Virus record (IMG/VR): IMGVR_UViG_3300043570_001980
Location: 186,001 to 250,000 of that record
Reading direction: 5' to 3' (one strand)
Length of the DNA stretch: 64,000 bases
In this document: in pieces, positions 19,770-45,077 of the stretch
How positions within the stretch are numbered: the first letter of the stretch is position 1
Layout of the letters: the number at the start of each line of letters is the position of its first letter
Position numbers and translations under genes: made by a program
The notes under the pieces: generated by a model
Database searches by the model: none
Told to the model about the DNA's origin: nothing
What the model saw: the letters and a program-made list of their open reading frames with translations, nothing else

Positions 19770-20675
19770 ATGTCATTATTACCAACACCACCAAAAAAAG
19801 TCAATTATCTCAACAACAGAGATATTTTGAAAGAAATTCATTTGAGTAAGAATACATATTGTTCGTTTTTAGATCCTGTAAACGATCATCAATATGATAT
19901 TATCTTGCCCAGCGTTAGCAAAATTAATCAAAAAACCATTGTCGACGCAAGACGCAATCGTGCTGACCGTATTAAACGTGAAACTGGCGTGGTCATTGAT
20001 CAAAAGAAAATCCCCAATACCGATCTTGTATTCAGAATCACCTGTTGGGAACACATACCAATGGCTCCTAAAAAGATTCCAAAAAGCCAGCAAAAAAAGC
20101 GCAAGCTTGAAGATATTTTAGATTTAGAAGAAGACGTGGTTGACTCTGTGCTTGATGAAATTGCAGAAGTTATTGAGCCTGTTGGTGACCCAACACACGT
20201 TCGTGTTAATTTTCCACCATTCTGGCATTATCGACTCACAGACCAAAAAGTACCTTACGTTGTGGGTCGAAGTCACTGGAAGGGAGATTTCGAAACTGGA
20301 GAATACAGTCGAGATCACGGTACTATGACTCGTAAGCTGGCCACAATGTTTATGAAGTTATGTGAAAGATATGCTACAAGGAGCAACTGGCGTGGATACA
20401 CCTACAACGAAGAAATGCGGGGACAAGCCTTGCTACAACTCAGTCAAATCGGATTGCAATTCGACGAATCAAAATCGCAGAACCCTTTTGCGTATTATAC
20501 TGCCGCTATCACTAATAGCTTTACTCGTGTCTTGAATATTGAGAAAAAGATGCAGAACATCCGTGATGATATTTTAGAAATTAACGGACTCAATCCATCC
20601 TGGACTCGACAAAATTCTGGCAAGGCTGGCATGGCTGCATTATCCGGACCGGTTGTATCTAGCTTGGATGAGTAG
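19770..20675 (+). CDS. gp55: Late-transcription sigma factor (T4 gp55-like)
   Basis: VNYLNNRDIL..; KLCERYATRSNWRGYTYNEEMRGQALLQL..FDESKSQNPFAYYTAAITNSFTRVLNIEKK resembles gp55; sits just upstream of gp47/gp46 as in T4-like phages. Confidence 0.8.
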   Translation: MSLLPTPPKKVNYLNNRDILKEIHLSKNTYCSFLDPVNDHQYDIILPSVSKINQKTIVDARRNRADRIKRETGVVIDQKKIPNTDLVFRITCWEHIPMAPKKIPKSQQKKRKLEDILDLEEDVVDSVLDEIAEVIEPVGDPTHVRVNFPPFWHYRLTDQKVPYVVGRSHWKGDFETGEYSRDHGTMTRKLATMFMKLCERYATRSNWRGYTYNEEMRGQALLQLSQIGLQFDESKSQNPFAYYTAAITNSFTRVLNIEKKMQNIRDDILEINGLNPSWTRQNSGKAGMAALSGPVVSSLDE

Positions 20676-24973: not shown

Positions 24974-25512
24974 TGCTTGAGTTTGAGTTAGAAATAGCAT
25001 CATCACAAGGTCGCACACCAGGATACCTACGGGTAGATGACCAAAAGACACACCTGTCAGATCCATTGATACATGCTAAATTTATTATTCAAGACCTAGG
25101 ACAATTAAAACTTGTGTTTGGCGGCAAGACAGAAAACGATACGGTAATAGACAGTAATGGTAATATTGTTGCTGATACAGAATTTAGAATCCTTAATATT
25201 AGATGCAATCAAATCAAACTAGAACCCTGGATACTAACTGATTTTGTTTATTACCCTGATTACTTTAGCGGGTATCTACAACAGTTTCCAGACTCTCCGA
25301 TAACTATTACTAGCCCATATCAATATAATTTTCCCGGAACAATAGAATTTAATTGGGTTTCTAATTTTTGGGATTGGTATTTTGAAGAAAAAAATAAACG
25401 AGAAGTCATTGGTTTCTTAGAAAAAGATCCTGATCGTGTTTGGAAGTTTCGTGGCAGTTTAGATCCCTGTGAGGATCTAGTAGAAAAAATAAAAGAACTA
25501 ATACAGCTATGA
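24973..25512 (+). CDS. Hypothetical protein coupled to the radical SAM gene
   Basis: 179 aa ORF overlapping the gp46 stop and the radical SAM start (ATGA). Confidence 0.7.
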   Translation: MLEFELEIASSQGRTPGYLRVDDQKTHLSDPLIHAKFIIQDLGQLKLVFGGKTENDTVIDSNGNIVADTEFRILNIRCNQIKLEPWILTDFVYYPDYFSGYLQQFPDSPITITSPYQYNFPGTIEFNWVSNFWDWYFEEKNKREVIGFLEKDPDRVWKFRGSLDPCEDLVEKIKELIQL

Positions 25513-27086
25513 AACGATTTGCATTTATCAACGTACCAAGTCAAGAGTTAGAAAGACCACCAGCCGCCGCCGCGGCCATAAGTGCTTGTGTACGTAGTGC
25601 TGGTTGGGAATGTAACGTGTATGATTTTAATTTGTTTTTACACAGCAATGTAACTACAGATGTGTGGGTTGAACTTGAACAATACTGGCGTTGCAAAAAA
25701 TATACACTAGAACCCGAAACTCAACAAATATTAAATGACACCATTGATCAATTTTTAACAACTGTAGCTGAGTTTGAGCCTGACATGGTTGGGATTTCTG
25801 TGTTTACTAGATTCAGTGTTATCCCTGCCAGTGTGATGTTGCAGAAGGTACGAGATCAATTAAACTGTAAAATTGTCATAGGCGGAGCAGGTAGCTATGC
25901 TTGGCCAGGAAGTTTGCCAAATTTAACCAAGAACCCGCTGGCATTAGATGCCACAACGTTTGCTGACTATGCACTAAAGACCGGATTAGTTGATTACTAC
26001 ATCCAAGGAGAAGGTGAACAGGCCATCATTGAATTATTAAATGGCAATGATAACTCCAACGGAGTTAACGGAAACCCAGCAGTTCAAATTCGTAAATTAG
26101 ACAAGCTGCCGCATCCTGAATACGAAGGCATTGACCCATCAAATTACTATTACACATCTGAGCCGGGAATTTATATCACTGCATCAAGAGGCTGTGTTAG
26201 GAATTGCAAATTTTGTAGTATTTCAGACATGTGGCCAAAGTATACTTCTCGTAGTGCCGATGATATTGTAAAAGAAATTATCAACGGAAAGAAAAAATAC
26301 AATGTCAACCTATTTCACTTTACCGACAGTTTAATCAACGGTAATATGAAAATGTGGAGAGAAGTAAATCAGCAATTAGTACAAGCTAAAAAACAAGACG
26401 TCAGTTTAGAACCAATAAAATATCTTGGTCAGTTTATTTGTAGAACAAGATTTGATCAAACTGAAAAAGACTGGGAGTTAATGGCCAAGGCTGGTTGTAA
26501 TATGCTGGTCACTGGATTTGAATCTTACAGTCCTCATGTTAGAAAACACATGGGTAAAAATCACACCAATGCAGATATTGATTTCCATTTTGCACAGTCA
26601 GCATATTACGGAATTAAGAATGTTTGTTTAATGTTTGTTGGATACCCTGTTGAAACATTGGAAGACCATAATTATAATATTGAATTTTTACACCGGTATC
26701 AAAAATATGCTCGAGCAGGAGTGATTCACATGGTACGTTGGGGGTACACTGGTATGTTCCGTGAAGAAGGCAAGCTAGCTGGTGATTCAAAAGTAAAACT
26801 AATTACTGATCCAGACTTTGCCAAACGTTTTCATAACCTACCACAAGGGCTTCGTGACATTGCACTGGGCTTTGGATGGGTAAATGAATTAAACCCAACA
26901 CTCACACTAAAAGAACGCATCCGTCGTCGACTAGAGTTACACGAAGTAAGTGTAAAACTAGGATGGCCACAGACTCGTAACAGAGAAGAGTTACAAATTT
27001 TATATAACATTTTACAAAACCTTGACAAGAATGTCATCAACACTCAGGATTTTGAAAACTTAGAAACCTTATTAGATTTTCATTAA
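25509..27086 (+). CDS. Cobalamin-binding (class B-like) radical SAM enzyme
   Basis: N-terminal B12-binding-like region (PDMVGISVF..IVIGG..GEGE) and SRGCVRNCKFC CxxxCxxC; FTDSLING, GFES and FVGYPVET motifs. Confidence 0.88.
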   Translation: MKRFAFINVPSQELERPPAAAAAISACVRSAGWECNVYDFNLFLHSNVTTDVWVELEQYWRCKKYTLEPETQQILNDTIDQFLTTVAEFEPDMVGISVFTRFSVIPASVMLQKVRDQLNCKIVIGGAGSYAWPGSLPNLTKNPLALDATTFADYALKTGLVDYYIQGEGEQAIIELLNGNDNSNGVNGNPAVQIRKLDKLPHPEYEGIDPSNYYYTSEPGIYITASRGCVRNCKFCSISDMWPKYTSRSADDIVKEIINGKKKYNVNLFHFTDSLINGNMKMWREVNQQLVQAKKQDVSLEPIKYLGQFICRTRFDQTEKDWELMAKAGCNMLVTGFESYSPHVRKHMGKNHTNADIDFHFAQSAYYGIKNVCLMFVGYPVETLEDHNYNIEFLHRYQKYARAGVIHMVRWGYTGMFREEGKLAGDSKVKLITDPDFAKRFHNLPQGLRDIALGFGWVNELNPTLTLKERIRRRLELHEVSVKLGWPQTRNREELQILYNILQNLDKNVINTQDFENLETLLDFH

Positions 27087-27148: not shown

Positions 27149-27577
27149 ATGACATGGCTATTTCAAGACACCCCAGTTGAGACATTGCCCGAAGAGTGTG
27201 TTGGATTTGTTTACTTGATTACAAATAATCTCACTGGTCGCAAGTACATAGGCAAAAAACTCGCAAAATTTTCAAAAACCACATACAAAACAGTAACACA
27301 AAAAAACGGCATAAAAAAGCGGAAGAAGATACGCTCGAAGATTGATTCAGATTGGAGAGAGTACTACGGGTCAAGCCCAGAATTAACCGCAGACGTAATC
27401 AAACTAGGCACCGAAAACTTCACCAGAGAAATACTTTATTATTGCAACTCCAAATCAGAATGCAGTTACATTGAAGCAAGAGAACAATTTTCAAGACGAG
27501 TATTAGAATCGCAAGATTATTACAACGGCCATATACAAGTTAGAGTACACGGTAGTCATATTAGAGGAAAACTATGA
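27149..27577 (+). CDS. Small GIY-YIG-family nuclease
   Basis: GFVYLITNNLTGRKYIGKK..YYGSS..FTREIL..E..YYN. Confidence 0.8.
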   Translation: MTWLFQDTPVETLPEECVGFVYLITNNLTGRKYIGKKLAKFSKTTYKTVTQKNGIKKRKKIRSKIDSDWREYYGSSPELTADVIKLGTENFTREILYYCNSKSECSYIEAREQFSRRVLESQDYYNGHIQVRVHGSHIRGKL

Positions 27578-28380
27578 GTGAAATTTTTTTACAAAAGTTT
27601 TATGACAATGTCAAAGATTTGTCTTGGCCTCAACTTATTGAAACCTACAGTGACTTTGTAAAATTGCCCGATAGTATCAAAAACGAATGTTATCAACAGC
27701 ATGGACTAGAATCAACACTGAATCAAATTGAAGATTCCGATTACTGGCTTGCCAGTCATCGGTCCAGGGTAGTGGTGTACCGACATCATTCTTTGGTGTT
27801 TATACCTGTGCCAAAATGCGGATTTATTTACTATCATGATTTGTTTACTCGTATAGGGTGGGAACAAATTACCCTGGACAAAGTAAATTTTGATCAGCAC
27901 ATTGTTTTTACTGCTATCATGAATCCAACGGATCGATATCTCAAAGGCTTAACTGAGTGGTTCTGGAAAAGAATTAGATTTGATAATTTTGACAATTTAG
28001 AACAGCAAGAACTATTTTTTAACATAGCATCTGACATACTGATTACTGATATACACACAATGCCATACACCGTCGAATATCAAGGTATTATCAATAAGAT
28101 ACATTGGATTCCGTCTGACAACTTGTCTGACAACGAAGTAAAACAATCAATGATGCATTTGTTTAAAAAACACAATTACAATATACAGCTACCACTTGAC
28201 GACCCCCGATTACATCAATCCAACCCAAAAAAACTAAAGCTTTACCAGGCATTAAAAAATGTACACATCCGTAAAAAACAAAAAACTTTTGAATTGTTGT
28301 ACGTTTTTTTAGCAGAAGATTTAAAATTTTACCGGCAGCTAGTTAATAAATTTGACCCAACTTGGTCTAAAAACATTTAA
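27574..28380 (+). CDS. Sulfotransferase-fold-like protein with an N-terminal KxxxWP mini-domain
   Basis: VFIPVPKCG (5'-PSB-like), MNPTDRYLKG (3'-PB-like RxPxxR), D.HT.P and terminal EDLKFY resemble Sulfotransfer_2-type proteins; motifs are degenerate. Confidence 0.5.
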   Translation: MSEIFLQKFYDNVKDLSWPQLIETYSDFVKLPDSIKNECYQQHGLESTLNQIEDSDYWLASHRSRVVVYRHHSLVFIPVPKCGFIYYHDLFTRIGWEQITLDKVNFDQHIVFTAIMNPTDRYLKGLTEWFWKRIRFDNFDNLEQQELFFNIASDILITDIHTMPYTVEYQGIINKIHWIPSDNLSDNEVKQSMMHLFKKHNYNIQLPLDDPRLHQSNPKKLKLYQALKNVHIRKKQKTFELLYVFLAEDLKFYRQLVNKFDPTWSKNI

Positions 28381-28394
28381 TTTTAAGCAGTTAC

Positions 28395-28826
28395 GACTCG
28401 CACAGGTCAATTTCGTGTGCCCTAGACCTGGATCTCGGATCACAGGGACGGAAGTCTTGCCGCTCTAGCAAGCACTCAATCACTACCCGAAAGGATGACG
28501 ATCGCTAATTGCCGCGGTTTGATTGTTTGAAAAGAATTTAAAGGCTAAAAAGACGCAGAAGTGATTCTGCAGGTTAATATAGTATGTTAGCGTATATTAT
28601 ATTGATTGCCGTTGTATAAAGACGCAACTCGAGGTACCGGACAACCGCCTCTGTAATGTTGTAACGCTATGTGGCTATTCGAACTCGGATAATGCTTTTA
28701 ATCTTTGCCCTGTGCGGGCAAAGTGTGACCAAAGAATCTGGATAATAACTGTAATCTCACTTCGCTCGATGTTTATAATAATATTGATGAGCGATAGCGA
28801 AATCAATAGAACTTCAACGAAGTTCT
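28395..28826 (+). ncRNA. Candidate structured non-coding RNA (or replication-origin/ssi-like structured DNA)
   Basis: ORF-free gap with at least 9 hairpins, including GCAGAA-GTGA-TTCTGC and CC-GAAA-GG (GNRA loops), CTTTGCCC-TGTGC-GGGCAAAG, CCTGGATC-TCG-GATCACAGG, a G.U-containing AATATAGTATGT/GTATATTATATT stem, and GAACTTC-AAC-GAAGTTC. Confidence 0.5.
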
Positions 28827-28836
28827 CATAAAGCCG

Positions 28837-29172
28837 TTATAAGTTAGTATCTGGCCAATCTCTAAACAATGCATGTTGAATATCACCAGCAACAAACTGA
28901 TTGAATGACTTGTGTTTCTCTTCGAGTTCTCCTTTGAGTGGTGCTACTCGTTTGAACGCATTGTCCATCTGACCCATGTCTCTAAACTCCATGAGTATCA
29001 TCCACTCTGGCATGTCGGCAATACTACGGAATCCCATTTTACATCTTGTGATTCTGTACGATACCATCTTGTCTTCGGAGATCAAATGATCAAAGAAACT
29101 TTTCATTCCGTTGACCCAGTCTAAGTCTGAGATATCGCCTTCTTTGTTTGCCCAAATTGTGTATAAGTCCAT
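28837..29172 (-). CDS. Small conserved protein (DUF6614-like, possible dimeric alpha/beta barrel)
   Basis: 111 aa; YRITRCKMGFRS..PEWMILMEF..QMDNAF..H..F..ALFRDWPD; last gene of the amidinotransferase operon. Confidence 0.55.
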   Translation of the reverse strand: MDLYTIWANKEGDISDLDWVNGMKSFFDHLISEDKMVSYRITRCKMGFRSIADMPEWMILMEFRDMGQMDNAFKRVAPLKGELEEKHKSFNQFVAGDIQHALFRDWPDTNL

Positions 29173-29173
29173 T

Positions 29174-30145
29174 TTATATTTCCTCTCTGTGAAGATCGCT
29201 GGTTACACAATGCAGACCATTGTCCCAAAAACACTTGTGTCTAAACTGTGAAACATGCGGAGTAACTTGATGCCGTTTGAGTGCATCAAATATTTGTTGA
29301 TTGTAGCCACTGATCACTACATTTTTATTGTCGATGATCAACATGTTTAATTCAAAAACAGTTTCTGCTACATAACCCAACAAATTCTTAAAGTAACAAT
29401 CAATAAACTCTGTGAGTTTATTATTACTTTCTTGCCCTGGCAACCACCAAGATCCTGTGTGTGTTGCTTGCCAATTCTTAAATGATGGTAATTTTTCTAG
29501 ACTGGGTTTGATATAAACTATTTCCCAATCATAGAAATACATTTTAAAAAATAGTTTTAGTAGTTGGTGATTTGCAGGATCGTCTATGGCTATAATCAAT
29601 CCTGGTGTAACAGGACAAAACCATCCATCAATATGCCCAGTCTGATGAAAAGCTGTTAATTTTTTATTGCTGGCTCTATTTTGTAAAAATTCATGAGCTG
29701 ATTTATTATTAGAATAAAATACACAGTCGAGAAATTGATAAACAGTGGCACCACACACTGATGGTAGATTAATTTCTATTTCTTGATTACCCTGAGCAAT
29801 CACATGATCAGAAATGTTTTTATAAAAATCCGGATCTATGTTATTGTAAAATGATTTAACAAGTTTATTTCCTAGCATTAACAAATGATCCCTGGCTGCC
29901 AACGGCGCCTTTGGTAGATTGTCAACATCAACATCAACAACACCTGCTGTTGGCCTAAGCGTGTGTACTCCAAGAGCATTCAGATTAACTGCTAGTGTAT
30001 GTAGGTCTTCTTCGGTTTCACTGGCAATTGTTTCAAAATGATTTCGAATCTCAACGTTGTTGATCCAACTATAAAACTCAGGACTCCAACTGCGGCCAAC
30101 CACACAGGTTTTTAGTCTATGCCATTCGCTGTTAATCTGATACAT
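29174..30145 (-). CDS. Amidinotransferase-family protein (copy 2)
   Basis: SEWHRLKTCVVG, ARDHL, GHIDGWF, FELNML and C-terminal DNGLHCVTSDL (His and Cys catalytic motifs of the AGAT/StrB1 family). Confidence 0.85.
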   Translation of the reverse strand: MYQINSEWHRLKTCVVGRSWSPEFYSWINNVEIRNHFETIASETEEDLHTLAVNLNALGVHTLRPTAGVVDVDVDNLPKAPLAARDHLLMLGNKLVKSFYNNIDPDFYKNISDHVIAQGNQEIEINLPSVCGATVYQFLDCVFYSNNKSAHEFLQNRASNKKLTAFHQTGHIDGWFCPVTPGLIIAIDDPANHQLLKLFFKMYFYDWEIVYIKPSLEKLPSFKNWQATHTGSWWLPGQESNNKLTEFIDCYFKNLLGYVAETVFELNMLIIDNKNVVISGYNQQIFDALKRHQVTPHVSQFRHKCFWDNGLHCVTSDLHREEI

Positions 30146-30588
30146 TACACCAACGGACCTAATATCTCAAAGCCATCAATATCTTGTTTGTATAAATGTG
30201 CTTGCTCTAAGTATAAAAATTTAAAACCACGCTGTTTATAGATAGCACATTCTGTTTTCATTGTTTCAATGCCTAGTCGCATTTTGGGTCGATGATAGGT
30301 CCAAGCAAATTGGTCGCATTGTGCGTTATACTGGTCAAATCTACGTATCAGGCTAAATGCAACCAGTTCAGCGTTGTCGTAGTAGCCAATGATGTCAGCC
30401 ATTGGATCTTGATAGCGACTGTGAAATATAGGCATTACTGATGAAAAATGTTTGTAGGTACAGTAGTACTTGTATATTTCATCTAGCTTGTTGAGTGTGG
30501 TTTCATCACGATCAGTGATGTAATTCCAACCAACAGTGGGTAGGTAATTGGTTTTATCTAGGTCAATTCTGGCAAATTGATAAGTCAT
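30145..30588 (-). CDS. Arginyl-tRNA-protein transferase (ATE/Bpt) C-terminal-like GNAT-fold protein
   Basis: GYYDNAELVAFSLI..FAWTY..RLGIETMKTECAIYKQRGFKFLYL..YK resembles the ATE_C pattern (LG..S...EI..A...G..YLYLG..YK). Confidence 0.55.
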   Translation of the reverse strand: MTYQFARIDLDKTNYLPTVGWNYITDRDETTLNKLDEIYKYYCTYKHFSSVMPIFHSRYQDPMADIIGYYDNAELVAFSLIRRFDQYNAQCDQFAWTYHRPKMRLGIETMKTECAIYKQRGFKFLYLEQAHLYKQDIDGFEILGPLV

Positions 30589-31814
30589 GTTCTATCCGGA
30601 AAAAAATCTTGCTGGATACCTTTTCGGTCCAGGTCCAAGGTAACACAATGTACACCACCGTCCCAGAAGTATCTGTGTCGCAAAGGGCAAATGTGAGGAG
30701 TTATGTTGTGACGTTTAAAAGCATCAAATGCTTTTTCATTGTAGCTGTTGACAATGACATTTTGTTGATTGATCACAAGGATATTTACATCAAACACACT
30801 TTCCTCAACATACCCTACCCAATCTTGCAACCATGTTTCTACATATTCAATCAGTTCGTCATCGTATTCACTACCCTTGATCCACCAACGCCCTTGATTT
30901 TTTTCTTTAAGGTCCAAAAATGATTTCACTTTGTTCCAGCCTTCTCCGCTCAGGTATACAACTTCCCATCCAGGAAATGTATCTGCATAGGTAGGCATAT
31001 CTTCTATGCTCACAATAAGACCAGGCTTAACAGGAGTAAAACAACCGTCGATATGTCCACCAGTGGTCACAATATGATTTCTAAAGTCTGGAAAAAAATG
31101 TTCAGTTAGTTTTTTGATTTTGTCGATATCGGCAGATTCAGATATCCCAAAAAATAAATCTTTTCCGATACGGGTGATTCCATTAGTTGGAATTTGATTT
31201 AACATGTCATGATATTGATTTTCAATGATAGGATTACCAGCTGACTTCACAAGACCAGTAACCGGTTCCCACCAGTCGAACTCACTAGCCTTGGATATAA
31301 TTTCATCAGAATTGTCACCAGGTTTAAACTCAAACTGAAACAAGTTTTTACATTCTTCTTGGATCCAAACTGGCAGCTGATCAAATGGAGTAAATTCTTG
31401 TGGCCAATCAGGACCTTTAAAGTTGTTGTAATTTTTTTTAGTCCAATTACCAGGAGGCATGATACTTCGTCCTGATGATTTTATGCTGATGTTGTCGTAA
31501 GGAAACACAAAAAAGTCTGATCCAATCATAATCATCTGATCTCTTGGAATCATGCTAACAGGGCCAGGTATGCGACGATTTTGTGTCAGTAACCGATCTA
31601 GTTGTACTGTGGGTACATTTGGTCTTACAGTCTTTACATTGAACTTTTCAAGTAATGTCACAAGATTCACAAAGTCTTCTTCAGTTTCAGTAGCAATACG
31701 TTCAAACAAACTGCGTAATCGTGGATTTTTTATAAAGCTATAAAACTCAGGAGGATAACTTTTACCCACAACACAAACTTGCAATGGATCCCACGGTTGA
31801 TGTACACTATACAT
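30585..31814 (-). CDS. Amidinotransferase-family protein (copy 1) with an internal KxxxWP insertion
   Basis: WDPLQVCVVG, PRDQ, TRIGKD, GHIDGCF, FDVNIL and DGGVHCVTLDL motifs. Confidence 0.88.
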   Translation of the reverse strand: MYSVHQPWDPLQVCVVGKSYPPEFYSFIKNPRLRSLFERIATETEEDFVNLVTLLEKFNVKTVRPNVPTVQLDRLLTQNRRIPGPVSMIPRDQMIMIGSDFFVFPYDNISIKSSGRSIMPPGNWTKKNYNNFKGPDWPQEFTPFDQLPVWIQEECKNLFQFEFKPGDNSDEIISKASEFDWWEPVTGLVKSAGNPIIENQYHDMLNQIPTNGITRIGKDLFFGISESADIDKIKKLTEHFFPDFRNHIVTTGGHIDGCFTPVKPGLIVSIEDMPTYADTFPGWEVVYLSGEGWNKVKSFLDLKEKNQGRWWIKGSEYDDELIEYVETWLQDWVGYVEESVFDVNILVINQQNVIVNSYNEKAFDAFKRHNITPHICPLRHRYFWDGGVHCVTLDLDRKGIQQDFFPDRT

Positions 31815-32320
31815 TATGTTTTCCTTGGATCCTGTCTGTGGTGAAACAGGGCTTGTAGATATTCTTCAGGCCAAGAGTGATAAAATCCTTTGTCAGCCAT
31901 TTGCTTGGCTTTGGTGTTTAAATCACTTAGACTTTGTACCAATGCTAATGCATACGTGCCTTGATTCATGCACACACCATTGATCATTTCAACATCATCT
32001 GGGTGATCTTCTAGTGCCAACATGTCTCTAGGTAACAGTACTTCCTTGTTAACCAATTCAATACTACCAGCAAGCATATCGTGTGACCATTCTGTTGGAT
32101 CGTACACATAGATAATAACTTCTCGGTTGCCCATGCCTTGACGCCCACAATTTTTAAGATCGTAGTAGGGATCGGCTCCAAGATAAACTGCATAGCTGTT
32201 CTTTACTCGTGCTGACCGTGCATAAGGACAAGGAGAAAATCCCCCTAATGCAGGATGTGGAACTTCTAAGAAGTTTGTAATCCACAGTTCTATATCTTGT
32301 TTGACTTGTTCTAGTTCCAT
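31814..32320 (-). CDS. Hypothetical protein (DUF1415-like CPYAR motif)
   Basis: 168 aa; WI..F..PCPYAR..DHP..LVQ..L..GFYHSW; translationally coupled on both sides. Confidence 0.55.
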   Translation of the reverse strand: MELEQVKQDIELWITNFLEVPHPALGGFSPCPYARSARVKNSYAVYLGADPYYDLKNCGRQGMGNREVIIYVYDPTEWSHDMLAGSIELVNKEVLLPRDMLALEDHPDDVEMINGVCMNQGTYALALVQSLSDLNTKAKQMADKGFYHSWPEEYLQALFHHRQDPRKT

Positions 32321-32538
32321 TAGAAGAAAGGTAATCCAGATTTTTTAGTAGTGTCTAAATTATCTTTAATCAAATTATTGATAATTTTTCTTTCGTTTGG
32401 GGCCAACGACATGGCATCCTCGTAGGACAGGCCGCCGCGCATGTACCAGGCAAACTTTATGGACTCTTCACGTATTTGATCACACTCTTTTTCCATCCGG
32501 TCAACAAGCTTGATGACGCGGTCAGAGTCCAGGCTCAA
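32320..32538 (-). CDS. Baseplate hub assembly protein (gp51-like)
   Basis: 72 aa; WYMRGGLSYEDAMSLAPNERKII; directly after the gp26-like gene as in T4-like phages. Confidence 0.55.
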   Translation of the reverse strand: MSLDSDRVIKLVDRMEKECDQIREESIKFAWYMRGGLSYEDAMSLAPNERKIINNLIKDNLDTTKKSGLPFF

Positions 32539-33377
32539 GAGTTGGAATCGAAAAAATTTGACATATCCAATGTAAAGTTTTGATCATACTCATTACCACA
32601 ATTGGTACATTTAATTTTAATTGGTTTTAGTTCAGCTTCTTGTTTGAGTTGAATTGCACGGTCACGTATTGCACCAAACGCAGATTTTTCACAGTTGTTC
32701 AAAAACTCAACAATAAATTCTTGTTCGTTGACCTGAGCACCTGGTGTTTTAATTACGCCAATGCTCTGAGCAATGCTTCTAATTGTAAGACTGGTAATTT
32801 TTAAAAATGCTTCGCCCAACTGCTTCAGTTTTTCTTCTTCGGGTATTTCTGCATTCTGAAACATTGCTACTAGTTTTTGATCTTCAAATTGAATCTGACT
32901 ATTTGAATTTAATTCCTGATAGGTCATTGGTTTAAAATACACTTCTAAGTCTCCAACTTTGACAGGCACATCATAGTCAGGAGAATTAATATTTTCAAGT
33001 ACTACTCGAAGATCAATTTGATATTCATCTTCATTTCCACAACTGGGGCATTTGGTACCTATGTCCATGCCGTGACCGTAAGTGGCAATACGTATTGCCA
33101 CCAGTAGCGTATCAACGTCTAGACTAGGGACCTGCCATGCATCTTTAATGTTTGGACAACAACTTTCAAAAATCTTAACCATGGCAGACCCGTTGAACAA
33201 AGCATCGGGTGTTCTGGTAGTAATTTCATCAACTGCGGTCATTGGGTAAATGGGAATTTCCTGATTGGGCGGAATAGTAATTGCTTCACTATTCCAGAAT
33301 TTACCTTTTGATGGCAATCTAATATAGATTGACGGTTGTCTAAAGTACTGCTTTAGTGGGTTAGCTGTTTGTGTCAT
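32535..33377 (-). CDS. gp26: Baseplate hub assembly chaperone (gp26-like)
   Basis: LPSKG, PMTAVDE, DVDTLLVAIRIATYG, two CxxC motifs (CPSC, CTNC) and terminal NFF. Confidence 0.75.
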   Translation of the reverse strand: MTQTANPLKQYFRQPSIYIRLPSKGKFWNSEAITIPPNQEIPIYPMTAVDEITTRTPDALFNGSAMVKIFESCCPNIKDAWQVPSLDVDTLLVAIRIATYGHGMDIGTKCPSCGNEDEYQIDLRVVLENINSPDYDVPVKVGDLEVYFKPMTYQELNSNSQIQFEDQKLVAMFQNAEIPEEEKLKQLGEAFLKITSLTIRSIAQSIGVIKTPGAQVNEQEFIVEFLNNCEKSAFGAIRDRAIQLKQEAELKPIKIKCTNCGNEYDQNFTLDMSNFFDSNS

Positions 33378-33389
33378 GTTTGGGTACCA

Positions 33390-33407
33390 TAAATATATCA
33401 GTACTTA
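33390..33407. promoter_or_regulatory. Face-to-face late promoters (TAAATA on +, TAAGTA on -)
   Basis: The 42 bp gap between gp26-like (-) and tape measure (+) contains TAAATA at 33390-33395 and TACTTA at 33402-33407. Confidence 0.5.
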
Positions 33408-33419
33408 TACACCTACATT

Positions 33420-44458: not shown

Positions 44459-44460
44459 CA

Positions 44461-44558
44461 TAAATACTTGTCAACACAATCAGGTGTTTTATGCTGAGAT
44501 TAATACCCACAGCGTAGCGGCTAGAACCCGCATCGGACTTCTTTAAGGAGAAAACAAA
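44461..44558 (+). promoter_or_regulatory. Late promoter followed by a structured 5' leader
   Basis: TAAATA at 44461, then three adjacent hairpins (AACAC/GTGTT, TATGCTG/CAGCGTA, GCGG/CCGC) before AAGGAG. Confidence 0.5.
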
Positions 44559-45077
44559 ATGGGTCGTCCTCTAAAAATTAAAAAATCCACAACCAAAGAC
44601 ATTGGTTTTAACAATCTTGGCAGTTTAACAAATCCAGTATATCCAACAACATTAAACTCGTCTCAATACCTGGGTGTGGTTGGCGGTGAGAACACCAGCG
44701 TGGCCACCACAGCTTATCCGGTGATTCGTGTGCAAGCATGTGAAATTGGCGGTGCTGAAGAAGAAGCTATCATTGTGCGCCAAAAAGGAAGCACAACATA
44801 CTTGGTACTGGGGCAAACCAGTGGAAATACATATCAAGCCACTCTGGCTAACGAAGCCACTGGTGCATTGTCACCAGGCAACATGAACATTGCTATGTTT
44901 AATGGCGATAGTACAGACATCTTGATCAGCAAACTCACAAACAAGTGGGCACTGGACTATTCAGTACCACCAGTTCGTTATGTGATTAACTTCTTCAGTG
45001 ACGAAGGCACAGAGATCAAGTCTGGCACCGTCGGTGTGACCAACAACTTGGCCATTGCAGAAAATTACACCAGCTAA
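44559..45077 (+). CDS. Virion structural protein (putative head decoration/fibre base)
   Basis: 172 aa, MGRPLK start, IVRQKG motif, strong SD, late promoter. Confidence 0.6.
   Translation: MGRPLKIKKSTTKDIGFNNLGSLTNPVYPTTLNSSQYLGVVGGENTSVATTAYPVIRVQACEIGGAEEEAIIVRQKGSTTYLVLGQTSGNTYQATLANEATGALSPGNMNIAMFNGDSTDILISKLTNKWALDYSVPPVRYVINFFSDEGTEIKSGTVGVTNNLAIAENYTS

What the first reader, a model, noticed from the sequence alone, without database searches (positions are those of the whole stretch)
28837..32320. Late-coupled cassette of two amidinotransferases flanking an Arg-tRNA-transferase-like enzyme
Seen: five genes (DUF1415-like, amidinotransferase 1, ATE_C-like, amidinotransferase 2, DUF6614-like) are chained by overlapping or near-adjacent stop/start codons directly behind the gp26/gp51-like baseplate assembly genes, so they appear to share a late transcript. 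Both amidinotransferases keep HIDG and the GxxHC nucleophile motif. Known: AGAT/StrB1-type enzymes move an amidino group from arginine, and ATE/Bpt enzymes transfer amino acids from aminoacyl-tRNA. Inference: a phage-encoded arginine/guanidino tailoring pathway acting on virion proteins, glycans, DNA or a small molecule. By eye the AGAT 'FDAAD' Asp is not conserved (TNG in copy 1, CGA in copy 2), which hints at altered chemistry. I know of no characterised phage system with this composition.
Basis: partly seen in the sequence, partly recalled or inferred. Interest (0 to 1): 0.85.

Follow-up and report, generated by a model that had tools for sequence, protein, structure and literature searches.

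The report
Phage amidinotransferase and ATE-like enzyme module
A freshwater jumbo phage carries, at the end of a baseplate operon, a recurring accessory enzyme module (a minimal arginyltransferase-like enzyme, two unknown-function proteins and optional amidinotransferases) whose product is unknown and which has not been described before.

Summary
The five-gene chain is real, at the stated coordinates, and all five family calls hold, but only by remote-homology methods. Both amidinotransferase-like genes (AT1, AT2) are paralogs of AGAT, HsvA and StrB1. They keep the Cys, His and both guanidinium-binding Asp, but lack AGAT Asp254 and Arg322. The 147-aa protein (p147) is a single GNAT domain homologous to the ATE1 core, with no ATE_N domain.

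Synteny changes the picture. The stable unit is DUF1415-like (p168), p147 and DUF6614. In 58 unique related loci, 43 have no AT, 12 have one and 3 have two.

AT clades still entered the two slots beside p147 repeatedly. In divergent phages the four families travel as a compact operon, in shuffled order, away from baseplate genes. Cultured jumbo relatives have the hub gene and the small gene after it, but no module.

So this is a mobile accessory enzyme module appended to a probable late operon, not a fixed five-gene pathway. Its function is unknown. My best guess is aminoacyl-tRNA-dependent acylation plus optional guanidino chemistry on a shared acceptor. No description of such a phage system turned up in the literature searches.

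The parts
33402..33409 (-). Late-promoter-like element TATAAGTA, 24 nt upstream of the hub start codon
   Evidence: Read. ATAAGTA or ATAAATA is conserved at -28 to -39 in relatives. All 9 exact ATAAATA sites in the window lie just upstream of genes on the matching strand. A gp55-like late sigma gene lies at 19770-20675. Promoter function is inferred, not shown.
32535..33377 (-). Baseplate hub protein, T4 gp26 type (280 aa); first gene of the operon
   Evidence: PF12322 T4_baseplate E=6.3e-17; phrog_150 baseplate hub E=3e-18.
32320..32538 (-). s72, small conserved ORF (72 aa, TTG start overlapping the hub stop); function unknown, 'gp51-like' not confirmed
   Evidence: No Pfam or PHROG hit. Homologs follow the hub gene in Atu_ph07 and Phosso and in nearly all related loci.
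31814..32320 (-). p168, DUF1415/DUF6875-like protein (168 aa); core module gene
   Evidence: Weak Pfam DUF6875 hit (E=0.0095, below cut-off). Atlas structural TM 0.82-0.83 to DUF1415/DUF6875 clusters. AF2 pLDDT 94, with no PDB fold match. Invariant residues include Cys31 (PCPYAR) and Asp105-His106 (EDHPDD).
30585..31814 (-). AT1, amidinotransferase-family paralog, clade I (409 aa); facultative module gene in slot A
   Evidence: PDB phmmer: HsvA 2.7e-10, AGAT 3.4e-10. Family profile: AGAT 9e-27. H254, D256, C390 and D92 are conserved. dN/dS 0.05.
30145..30588 (-). p147, single-domain ATE_C-type GNAT (147 aa); core module gene
   Evidence: AF2 pLDDT 84 with a full GNAT topology. Foldseek PDB hits include VipF, Ate1, Sba18/Sbb17, MprF and FemX. 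The family profile hits longer proteins that pass the Pfam ATE_C cut-off. The broadened profile hits only ATE1 in the PDB, at 1.6e-10.
29174..30145 (-). AT2, amidinotransferase-family paralog, clade III (323 aa); facultative module gene in slot B
   Evidence: 29% identical to AT1, E=6e-51. StrB1 3.7e-4. H171, D173 and C313 are kept; Cys stands at the AGAT Asp254 position. dN/dS 0.19.
28837..29172 (-). DUF6614 protein (111 aa); core module gene and last gene of the operon
   Evidence: PF20319, E=7.4e-21, 74.8 bits. Atlas structural neighbours are dimeric alpha/beta-barrel families: DUF1330, NIPSNAP, HapK, Dabb, ABM, EthD. 72-96% identical across most related loci, where the hub is about 50%.
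28808..28826 (-). Terminator-like hairpin just after the DUF6614 stop
   Evidence: Consensus scan. It is a weak pattern match only, and the count of such sites does not exceed shuffles.

Best explanation
This is a mobile accessory enzyme module of aquatic tailed phages. Its core has three genes: a DUF1415/DUF6875-like protein (p168), a minimal one-domain relative of the arginyl/leucyl-tRNA-protein transferases (p147), and a DUF6614 alpha/beta-barrel protein. In a minority of phages the core is expanded by one or two amidinotransferase-family paralogs. The window's phage has the full expansion, with AT1 and AT2 on either side of p147.

In this freshwater jumbo-phage lineage the module has been appended to the 3' end of the baseplate-hub operon. 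It is probably read from that operon's late-type promoter, with stop/start-coupled translation.

Proposed mechanism (inferred, not shown): p147 uses an aminoacyl-tRNA to acylate an amine on an acceptor. Where present, the AT paralogs carry out covalent Cys-based guanidino chemistry on the same acceptor or its precursor. Amidino transfer from arginine, or from an arginyl moiety, to a primary amine is the most likely reaction. p168 and DUF6614 would act as further tailoring or binding components.

The acceptor is not identified. AT paralogs elsewhere sit in sugar-related neighbourhoods, and structural neighbours of p147 act on small molecules, so I lean towards an amino-sugar, glycan or small amine rather than a virion protein.
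For: Shown here:
- Gene chain with TAATG and ATGA junctions.
- AT homology to AGAT, HsvA, StrB1 and SxtG, with the Cys, His and both guanidinium-clamping Asp conserved.
- p147 has a GNAT fold and homology specific to ATE1.
- All five genes are under purifying selection.

Evidence for a functional module:
- In the p147-sampled set, the two slots beside p147 hold 18 AT genes and only one other insert.
- Those ATs come from three AT clades.
- In the AT-sampled set, 42 of 76 loci have AT directly beside p168, p147 or DUF6614, in shuffled orders. These include stand-alone four-gene operons in divergent phages.

Evidence that it is accessory and mobile:
- Atu_ph07 and Phosso have the hub gene and s72 but no module.
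- AT presence changes at least 16 times (slot A) and 8 times (slot B) on the core-gene tree.

Evidence for late expression:
- A conserved TATAAGTA/TATAAATA lies upstream of the hub gene, and no internal TATAAATA occurs in 54 relatives.

The lean towards a sugar or small-molecule acceptor:
- AT paralogs elsewhere in the same phage genome lie among a UDP-glucose/GDP-mannose dehydrogenase-family gene and GT2.
- In S-SCSM2R the AT lies beside KdsA, KdsB and a glycosyltransferase.
- In L021 the AT pair lies a few genes from GT25 and a 2OG oxygenase.
- Foldseek neighbours of p147 include Sba18/Sbb17, FemX and MprF.
Against: - 43 of 58 unique related loci have the core without any AT, so the core works without ATs.
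- 34 of 76 AT-sampled loci have ATs without the core, so each can act alone. The coupling may be opportunistic.
- The ATs lack AGAT Asp254 (the family consensus is Asn; AT2 has Cys) and Arg322. Amidinotransferase chemistry and free arginine as donor are therefore both uncertain.
- p147 lacks the ATE_N domain, and its only sequence-level relatives with solved structures act on protein N-termini. That argues against a small-molecule acceptor.
- No expression, product or activity data exist. The promoter call is a motif match with one mismatch.
Confidence: 0.4

Rival explanations
1. Virion-protein tailoring. The module modifies a structural or packaged protein late in infection, for example by N-terminal aminoacylation by p147 followed by amidination or deimination by the ATs.
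For: - The module sits at the end of the hub operon behind a late-type promoter.
- p147's only relatives with solved structures at sequence level are ATE1 protein transferases.
- The AT homolog of cyanophage S-SCSM2R (ORF266) was detected in the virion proteome (PMC12801897).
- p168 homologs lie just upstream of gp25 in Syn1 and S-SCSM2R, and beside a virion structural protein in HMO-2011.
Against: - In divergent phages the same module is a stand-alone operon among NAMPT, NT5C, sugar methyltransferase and AAA ATPase genes, not structural genes.
- Cultured relatives build virions without it.
- The authors of the S-SCSM2R paper themselves regard ORF266 as unlikely to be a structural protein.
- The closest AT relatives with solved structures all act on small molecules.
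Confidence: 0.2
2. No joint pathway. The five genes are independent accessory genes ('morons') that accumulated in a hyperplastic junction next to a homing endonuclease, and each acts alone. For example, p147 could be a Bpt-like N-degron transferase that redirects host proteolysis, while the ATs act in unrelated arginine or polyamine metabolism.
For: - ATs are absent from 74% of related loci, and AT presence is highly labile.
- ATs are common elsewhere, with at least 576 relatives in IMG/VR and 34 of 76 sampled loci without core genes.
- Distant p147 relatives sit in other contexts, for example next to a SET-domain gene.
- The segE homing endonuclease and variable genes lie immediately downstream.
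- AT1 is 86% identical between the window and L007 while p168 is 57%, which indicates mosaic exchange.
Against: - Slots A and B are filled almost only by ATs, 18 against 1 other insert.
- Those ATs come from three separate AT clades.
- The four families recur together in shuffled order in distant phages.
- Stop/start overlaps are maintained at the junctions.
Confidence: 0.25
3. DNA hypermodification or DNA counter-ion synthesis. The module aminoacylates or guanidinylates a modified base, or makes guanidino-polyamines that are packaged with the 340-kb genome.
For: - HsvA, a polyamine amidinotransferase by the literature (from my own knowledge, not read here), is among the closest solved relatives.
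- Late timing would suit packaging.
- There is a GNAT-fold precedent for late DNA modification (Mu Mom; recalled from the literature, not tested here).
- Nucleotide-metabolism genes flank the module in some divergent phages.
Against: - No hydroxymethylase, DpdA, kinase or transferase genes of the known hypermodification pathways lie next to the module in any locus examined.
- No polyamine-synthesis gene lies beside the module in the loci examined. The one AdoMet decarboxylase seen lies about 2.4 kb from a distant p147 relative in L104.
- The BFVD fold search returned no named DNA-modifying enzyme.
- This reading is speculative.
Confidence: 0.1

Closest known systems
L-arginine:glycine amidinotransferase (AGAT), StrB1, HsvA and SxtG: the amidinotransferase branch of the guanidino-group-modifying (pentein) superfamily
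   Same: The homology is significant (family profile against AGAT 9e-27, HsvA 1e-25, StrB1 5e-22, SxtG 9e-18). The nucleophilic Cys (AGAT C407), His303, Asp305 (the GHxDG motif) and Asp170 (the PRD motif) are conserved. The C-terminal GGxHCxT motif is kept. Paired paralogs occur, recalling StrB1/StrB2 in streptomycin biosynthesis (from my own knowledge).
   Different: No Pfam hit was returned for either AT at E<=0.1. AGAT Asp254 of the Cys-His-Asp triad aligns with Asn in the family consensus, with a 3-residue insertion in AT1, and with Cys in the AT2 clade. Arg322, which binds the arginine carboxylate in AGAT, is Met in AT1 and Pro in AT2. The genes are phage-encoded, facultative, and sit in an operon with an ATE-like GNAT. 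The substrate is unknown.
Arginyl-tRNA-protein transferase ATE1 and bacterial Bpt (Pfam ATE_N + ATE_C)
   Same: p147 has a GNAT fold. The profile homology covers the ATE1 catalytic core (KlAte1 residues 228-317, E=1.6e-10). The motif arrangement is shared: xLG, then YLYLxxxxxxYK, then GFE.
   Different: p147 is only 147 aa, a single domain with no ATE_N domain or its Cys cluster. It does not itself reach any Pfam ATE_C score; only its longer relatives do. The amino-acid donor and the acceptor are unknown. It forms a large, mostly viral family (Atlas clusters of up to 3,698 members).
Aminoacyl-tRNA-dependent GNAT-fold transferases acting on non-protein acceptors: FemX, MprF/aaPGS, and the streptothricin enzymes Sba18/Sbb17
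   Same: These are among the best structural neighbours of the p147 model (Foldseek E=4e-5 to 3e-4, TM 0.56-0.69 by query). They show that this fold can aminoacylate sugars, lipids and antibiotic scaffolds.
   Different: There is no sequence-level similarity. Those enzymes have two GNAT lobes or extra domains, whereas p147 has one. The resemblance is in fold only.
Accessory sugar/glycan gene clusters containing an amidinotransferase in T4-like cyanophages (e.g. S-SCSM2R ORF266 beside KdsA/KdsB)
   Same: They carry a homologous AT (30% identity to AT2) in a flexible accessory region of an aquatic myovirus. AT pairs are also seen in marine cyanophage contigs (L020, L021).
   Different: Those clusters have no p147 or DUF6614 partner, and their neighbours are sugar and 2OG-oxygenase genes. 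Their function is equally uncharacterised.

Membership tests
Amidinotransferase (AGAT/StrB1 type) | Significant sequence homology to characterised amidinotransferases | tested here: met
   (AT1: HsvA 2.7e-10, AGAT 3.4e-10, StrB1 2.8e-6). (AT2: StrB1 3.7e-4). (family profile: AGAT 9e-27). (AT1 against AT2, 6e-51).
Amidinotransferase (AGAT/StrB1 type) | Catalytic Cys nucleophile (AGAT C407) and His303 | tested here: met
   AT1 has C390 and H254; AT2 has C313 and H171. Both positions are at least 90% conserved in 19 family members.
Amidinotransferase (AGAT/StrB1 type) | Guanidinium-binding Asp170 and Asp305 | tested here: met
   The PRD motif (AT1 D92; ARD in AT2) and the GHxDG motif (AT1 D256, invariant) align to AGAT D170 and D305.
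Amidinotransferase (AGAT/StrB1 type) | Third triad residue Asp254 (FD254AAD) | tested here: not met
   In the HMMER alignment to AGAT, D254 aligns to the family-consensus Asn. AT1 has a 3-residue insertion there (N-Q-I-P-T-N-G). The AT2 clade has Cys.
Amidinotransferase (AGAT/StrB1 type) | Arg322, which binds the substrate alpha-carboxylate | tested here: not met
   It aligns to Met in AT1 and Pro in AT2.
Amidinotransferase (AGAT/StrB1 type) | Match to the curated Pfam or NCBIfam family model | tested here: not met
   No Pfam hit at E<=0.1 and no NCBIfam hit at E<=1 for AT1 or AT2. Only phrog_25854 (unknown function) matches.
Amidinotransferase (AGAT/StrB1 type) | Amidino-group transfer activity | not testable with these tools
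   This needs an enzyme assay.
ATE/Bpt aminoacyl-tRNA-protein transferase | ATE_C catalytic GNAT core | tested here: met
   p147 itself has no Pfam hit. Its family profile finds longer proteins (P0146 at 1e-26 and others) that pass the ATE_C gathering score. The broadened profile A4 hits only ATE1 in the PDB, at 1.6e-10 and 3e-8. The AF2 model has a GNAT fold, and Foldseek finds Ate1 at 4e-5.
ATE/Bpt aminoacyl-tRNA-protein transferase | N-terminal ATE_N domain with its conserved Cys motif | tested here: not met
   p147 is 147 aa and the GNAT fold fills it entirely. No ATE_N hit was found in p147 or in eight longer relatives scanned.
ATE/Bpt aminoacyl-tRNA-protein transferase | Use of aminoacyl-tRNA as donor, with a protein N-terminus as acceptor | not testable with these tools
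   The canonical acetyl-CoA Q/R-x-x-G-x-G/A loop is absent by my reading of the sequence (R104-L-G106-I-E). This is compatible with an aminoacyl-tRNA donor but is not proof.
DUF1415 / DUF6875 | Match to the Pfam model | tested here: inconclusive
   DUF6875 scores 16.5 bits against a cut-off of 24.5. Atlas structural TM is 0.82-0.83 to clusters carrying DUF1415 or DUF6875. There is no PDB fold match.
DUF6614 | Match to the Pfam model | tested here: met
   PF20319 scores 74.8 bits against a cut-off of 25, over the full length.
T4 gp51 (hub assembly catalyst), as claimed for the 72-aa ORF | Sequence similarity to gp51 | tested here: not met
   No Pfam, PHROG or NCBIfam hit. By tblastn the only relatives are hypothetical proteins in Atu_ph07 and Phosso.

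The most novel reading that the evidence does not exclude
The four-family module is a previously unrecognised phage pathway. It would install an aminoacyl and/or guanidino group on a macromolecule (a virion or host protein, an envelope glycan, or DNA), drawing on aminoacyl-tRNA and arginine as donors. The minimal one-domain ATE-like enzyme would be a new class of tRNA-dependent transferase, widespread in viruses.
Probability: 0.2. Interest if true: 0.85.

Novelty: new variant of a known kind. Interest (0 to 1): 0.6.

Why it matters
Aminoacyl-tRNA-dependent transferases and amidinotransferases are known from N-degron pathways, cell-wall and lipid modification, and antibiotic biosynthesis. I found no characterised phage example of either in the literature searches.

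The p147 family is large and almost wholly viral, with Atlas clusters of up to about 3,700 members. AT relatives number at least 576 in IMG/VR.

Working out what this module makes could reveal a new phage-driven modification of proteins, glycans or metabolites in freshwater bacteria. It could also assign functions to DUF1415/DUF6875 and DUF6614.

Natural variants with zero, one or two ATs in otherwise syntenic phages provide a ready-made comparative experiment.

Tried and rejected
- Direct Pfam, NCBIfam and PHROG scans gave nothing useful for AT1, AT2 or p147. Profiles and folds were needed.
- blastn of the cassette against 50,697 phage records found no match.
- tblastn of p147 and DUF6614 against isolate phages found no match, so no cultured phage with the full module was found.
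- A PDB search with the narrow p147 profile A1 found nothing. Only the broadened profile A4 reached ATE1.
- The PDB fold search for p168 gave no credible match (best E=0.027, TM 0.26).
- The BFVD search for p147 returned only uncharacterised proteins and generic GNATs.
- A search for exact T4 late promoters (TATAAATA) inside the operon found none, in the window or in 54 relatives.
- I first read the cassette as a mere insertion hot-spot, because most relatives lack ATs. I revised this after the AT-sampled scan showed the four families travelling together in divergent phages.
- The genome-contig scan found only two hits, both in one Haliscomenobacter MAG. These are probably mis-binned phage contigs and are not usable as host evidence.
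- Literature searches (amidinotransferase, ATE_C, arginyltransferase or arginylation with phage; DUF6614; DUF1415) found no description of such a system.
Its family identity was already settled by the PDB profile hits.

Full report
**What is there.**
The window comes from a freshwater T4-like jumbo phage.
- IMG/VR contigs of 342-345 kb are 98-100% identical across the region.
- The major capsid protein is 66-67% identical to those of PA5oct, Phosso and Vibrio phage 2.275.O.
- The window also encodes a gp55-like late sigma factor, gp46/gp47, portal, prohead protease and capsid genes.

Seven co-directional ORFs lie on the minus strand:

| Gene | Coordinates | Identity |
|---|---|---|
| hub | 32535-33377 | gp26-type baseplate hub; PF12322, 6e-17 |
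| s72 | 32320-32538 | 72-aa ORF, function unknown |
| p168 | 31814-32320 | DUF1415/DUF6875-like |
| AT1 | 30585-31814 | amidinotransferase family |
| p147 | 30145-30588 | ATE_C-type GNAT |
| AT2 | 29174-30145 | amidinotransferase family |
| DUF6614 | 28837-29172 | PF20319 |

The junctions are TTGA, TAATG, TAATG, ATGA, TAATG and a 1-nt spacer.

**Family identities.**
- *AT1 and AT2.* Neither has a Pfam or NCBIfam hit. However, AT1 finds HsvA and AGAT at about 3e-10 in the PDB. AT2 is its paralog (29% identity, E=6e-51). A 19-member family profile finds AGAT at 9e-27, HsvA at 1e-25, StrB1 at 5e-22 and SxtG at 9e-18, and no other enzyme class.
- *AT active site.* The residue-level alignment shows that AGAT Cys407, His303, Asp305 and Asp170 are conserved (AT1 C390, H254, D256, D92). 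Asp254 aligns to an Asn in the family consensus, a 3-residue insertion in AT1, and a Cys in the AT2 clade. Arg322 is Met in AT1 and Pro in AT2.
- *p147.* It has no direct family hit. Its AF2 model (pLDDT 84) is a complete single GNAT fold. Foldseek returns GNAT acetyltransferases together with Ate1, the tRNA-dependent peptide synthases Sba18/Sbb17, MprF/aaPGS and FemX. Its profile reaches 225-268-aa proteins that pass the Pfam ATE_C cut-off. A broadened profile hits only ATE1 in the whole PDB, at 1.6e-10. No ATE_N domain exists in it.
- *p168.* The model is confident (pLDDT 94) with no solved counterpart. It resembles DUF1415/DUF6875 clusters structurally (TM 0.82-0.83).
- *DUF6614.* It is a clear Pfam member, and its structural neighbours are dimeric alpha/beta-barrel families.
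- *s72.* It could not be linked to gp51.

**Synteny from the p147 side.**
A scan with p147 found 296 relatives in IMG/VR, and the best 80 were fetched.
- 58 unique loci show all three core genes. Of these, 43 have hub-s72-p168-p147-DUF6614 with no AT, 9 have an AT between p168 and p147 (slot A), 3 have one between p147 and DUF6614 (slot B), and 3 have both.
- The five-gene form is therefore the exception.
- The two slots are nevertheless filled almost only by ATs: 18 AT genes against one other insert.
- The ATs belong to three clades. Clade I (409 aa) occurs in slot A only. Clade II occurs in slot A or B. Clade III (323-338 aa) occurs in slot B or elsewhere.
- On a p168+p147 tree, AT presence changes at least 16 times (slot A) and 8 times (slot B).

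**Synteny from the AT side.**
A scan with the AT family alignment found at least 576 relatives.
- Of 76 new loci, 42 have an AT directly beside p168, p147 or DUF6614.
- The orders vary: p168-p147-AT-DUF6614 (the commonest), p168-AT-AT-DUF6614, p168-p147-DUF6614-AT-AT, p168-AT and AT-p168.
- In divergent phages the module is a compact operon bounded by opposite-strand genes. Its neighbours include NAMPT, NT5C, a sugar C-methyltransferase and an AAA ATPase, not baseplate genes.
- The other 34 loci have ATs alone, often as pairs.
- Marine cyanophage contigs carry AT pairs with no core genes detected, near psbA, GT25 and 2OG-oxygenase genes.
- In S-SCSM2R the AT lies beside KdsA, KdsB and a glycosyltransferase.
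- The window's own phage has a second AT locus, with a UDP-glucose/GDP-mannose dehydrogenase-family gene, GT2, a fatty-acid desaturase and UvdE.
- The cultured relatives Atu_ph07 and Phosso have the hub gene and s72 but no module. This is effectively an empty site.

**Expression.**
- ATAAATA occurs only nine times in the window, each time just upstream of a gene on the matching strand. It is thus a credible late promoter core for this phage.
- The hub operon has TATAAGTA 24 nt before its start codon. This element, or TATAAATA, is conserved in relatives, and no TATAAATA occurs inside the operon in 54 relatives.
- Late co-transcription is therefore a reasonable inference for this lineage, but it is not shown.
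- All five genes are under purifying selection (dN/dS 0-0.42).

**Interpretation.**
The evidence supports a mobile accessory enzyme module with a three-gene core and facultative AT expansion. In this lineage it is appended to the end of a late structural operon.
- Some functional link between the ATs and the core is supported by repeated, clade-independent adjacency and by co-travel in distant phages.
- The link cannot be obligate in either direction.
- The mechanism I commit to is tRNA-dependent aminoacylation by p147 plus Cys-based guanidino chemistry by the ATs on a shared acceptor, which I lean to think is a sugar or small amine. This is inference from family chemistry and neighbourhoods. 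I give it about 0.4.
- The rivals are virion-protein tailoring (0.2), independent accessory genes (0.25), and DNA or counter-ion modification (0.1).
- The 'arginine theme' that links the two enzyme names is not evidence. Bpt-type ATE_C enzymes transfer Leu, and the ATs lack the AGAT arginine-carboxylate ligand.

**Novelty and verdict.**
No paper describing such a phage system turned up. The parts are divergent members of known superfamilies, and their conserved assembly in phages appears undescribed. I rate it a new variant of a known kind, with interest 0.6.

Noticed in passing
window 28395-28528 (+); also L004 11287-11422, L094 9078-9213, L068 9084-9229, L102 10132-10267: A strong match to the orphan Rfam family Polynucleobacter-1 RNA (RF01718; 120 bits against a gathering score of 37). 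It lies in the convergent gap between the segE/p268 operon and the module. It recurs in 4 of 9 related phage loci, where checked (L004, L094) immediately 3' of segE on its strand. The motif may therefore be phage-borne.
   Followed up: partly
window 44472-44561 (+): A freshwater-2 RNA (RF02980, 67.9 bits) begins 6 nt after a late-promoter-like ATAAATA (44460-44466) and runs up to the start of the ORF at 44559. It looks like a 5' leader of a late gene.
   Followed up: no
window 25509-27086 (+), 27149-27577 (+), 27574-28380 (+): Three genes converge on the module. The first is a B12-binding radical SAM enzyme (best NCBIfam hits are RiPP C-methyltransferase and PhpK-type P-methyltransferase, all far below cut-off). 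The second is a SegE-type GIY-YIG homing endonuclease. The third is an unannotated 268-aa ORF found only in the window's closest relatives. The radical SAM gene is variably present in relatives.
   Followed up: partly
window 28837-29172 (-) and related loci: DUF6614 is by far the most conserved gene of the operon. It is 72-96% identical across most related loci, where the hub protein is about 50% and p168 about 55%. dS is saturated (1.7) and dN/dS is 0.06, which indicates an unusually strong constraint on a 111-aa protein.
   Followed up: partly
L136 (same phage contig as the window, about 120 kb away) and L142: The window's phage carries a second locus with two more AT-like genes (three in the 98%-related phage, L142). 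They sit in a co-directional cluster with a UDP-glucose/GDP-mannose dehydrogenase-family gene, GT2, a fatty-acid desaturase, UvdE and a metallophosphoesterase. The genome therefore holds at least four amidinotransferase-family genes.
   Followed up: partly
L105 (Syn1_090), L107 (S-SCSM2R ORF100), L106 (HMO-2011 gp66): Distant p168 (DUF1415-like) homologs lie just upstream of the gp25 baseplate wedge gene in T4-like cyanophages, and beside a virion structural protein in a podovirus. No p147 or DUF6614 is nearby. p168 may have its own link to structural modules.
   Followed up: partly
L103 2-343 / 343-807: A distant p147 relative (weak ATE_C hit) is start/stop-coupled to a SET-domain (lysine methyltransferase-like) gene on a short metagenomic contig. 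This hints at a protein-modification context for some family members.
   Followed up: no
L184, L185 (NZ_JBBAKG010000001.1 and NZ_JBBAKG010000003.1): Two contigs of 183 kb and 148 kb, filed in a Haliscomenobacter sp. MAG, carry p147 homologs (79% and 68% identity). They are probably two phage genomes mis-binned into the MAG. At best this is a weak host hint.
   Followed up: no
window 33378-33419: The 42-bp gap between the hub gene and the divergent 1108-aa tape-measure/lysin-like gene holds two back-to-back late-promoter-like elements: TATAAGTA on the minus strand and CATAAATA on the plus strand. The architecture is conserved across the lineage.
   Followed up: partly
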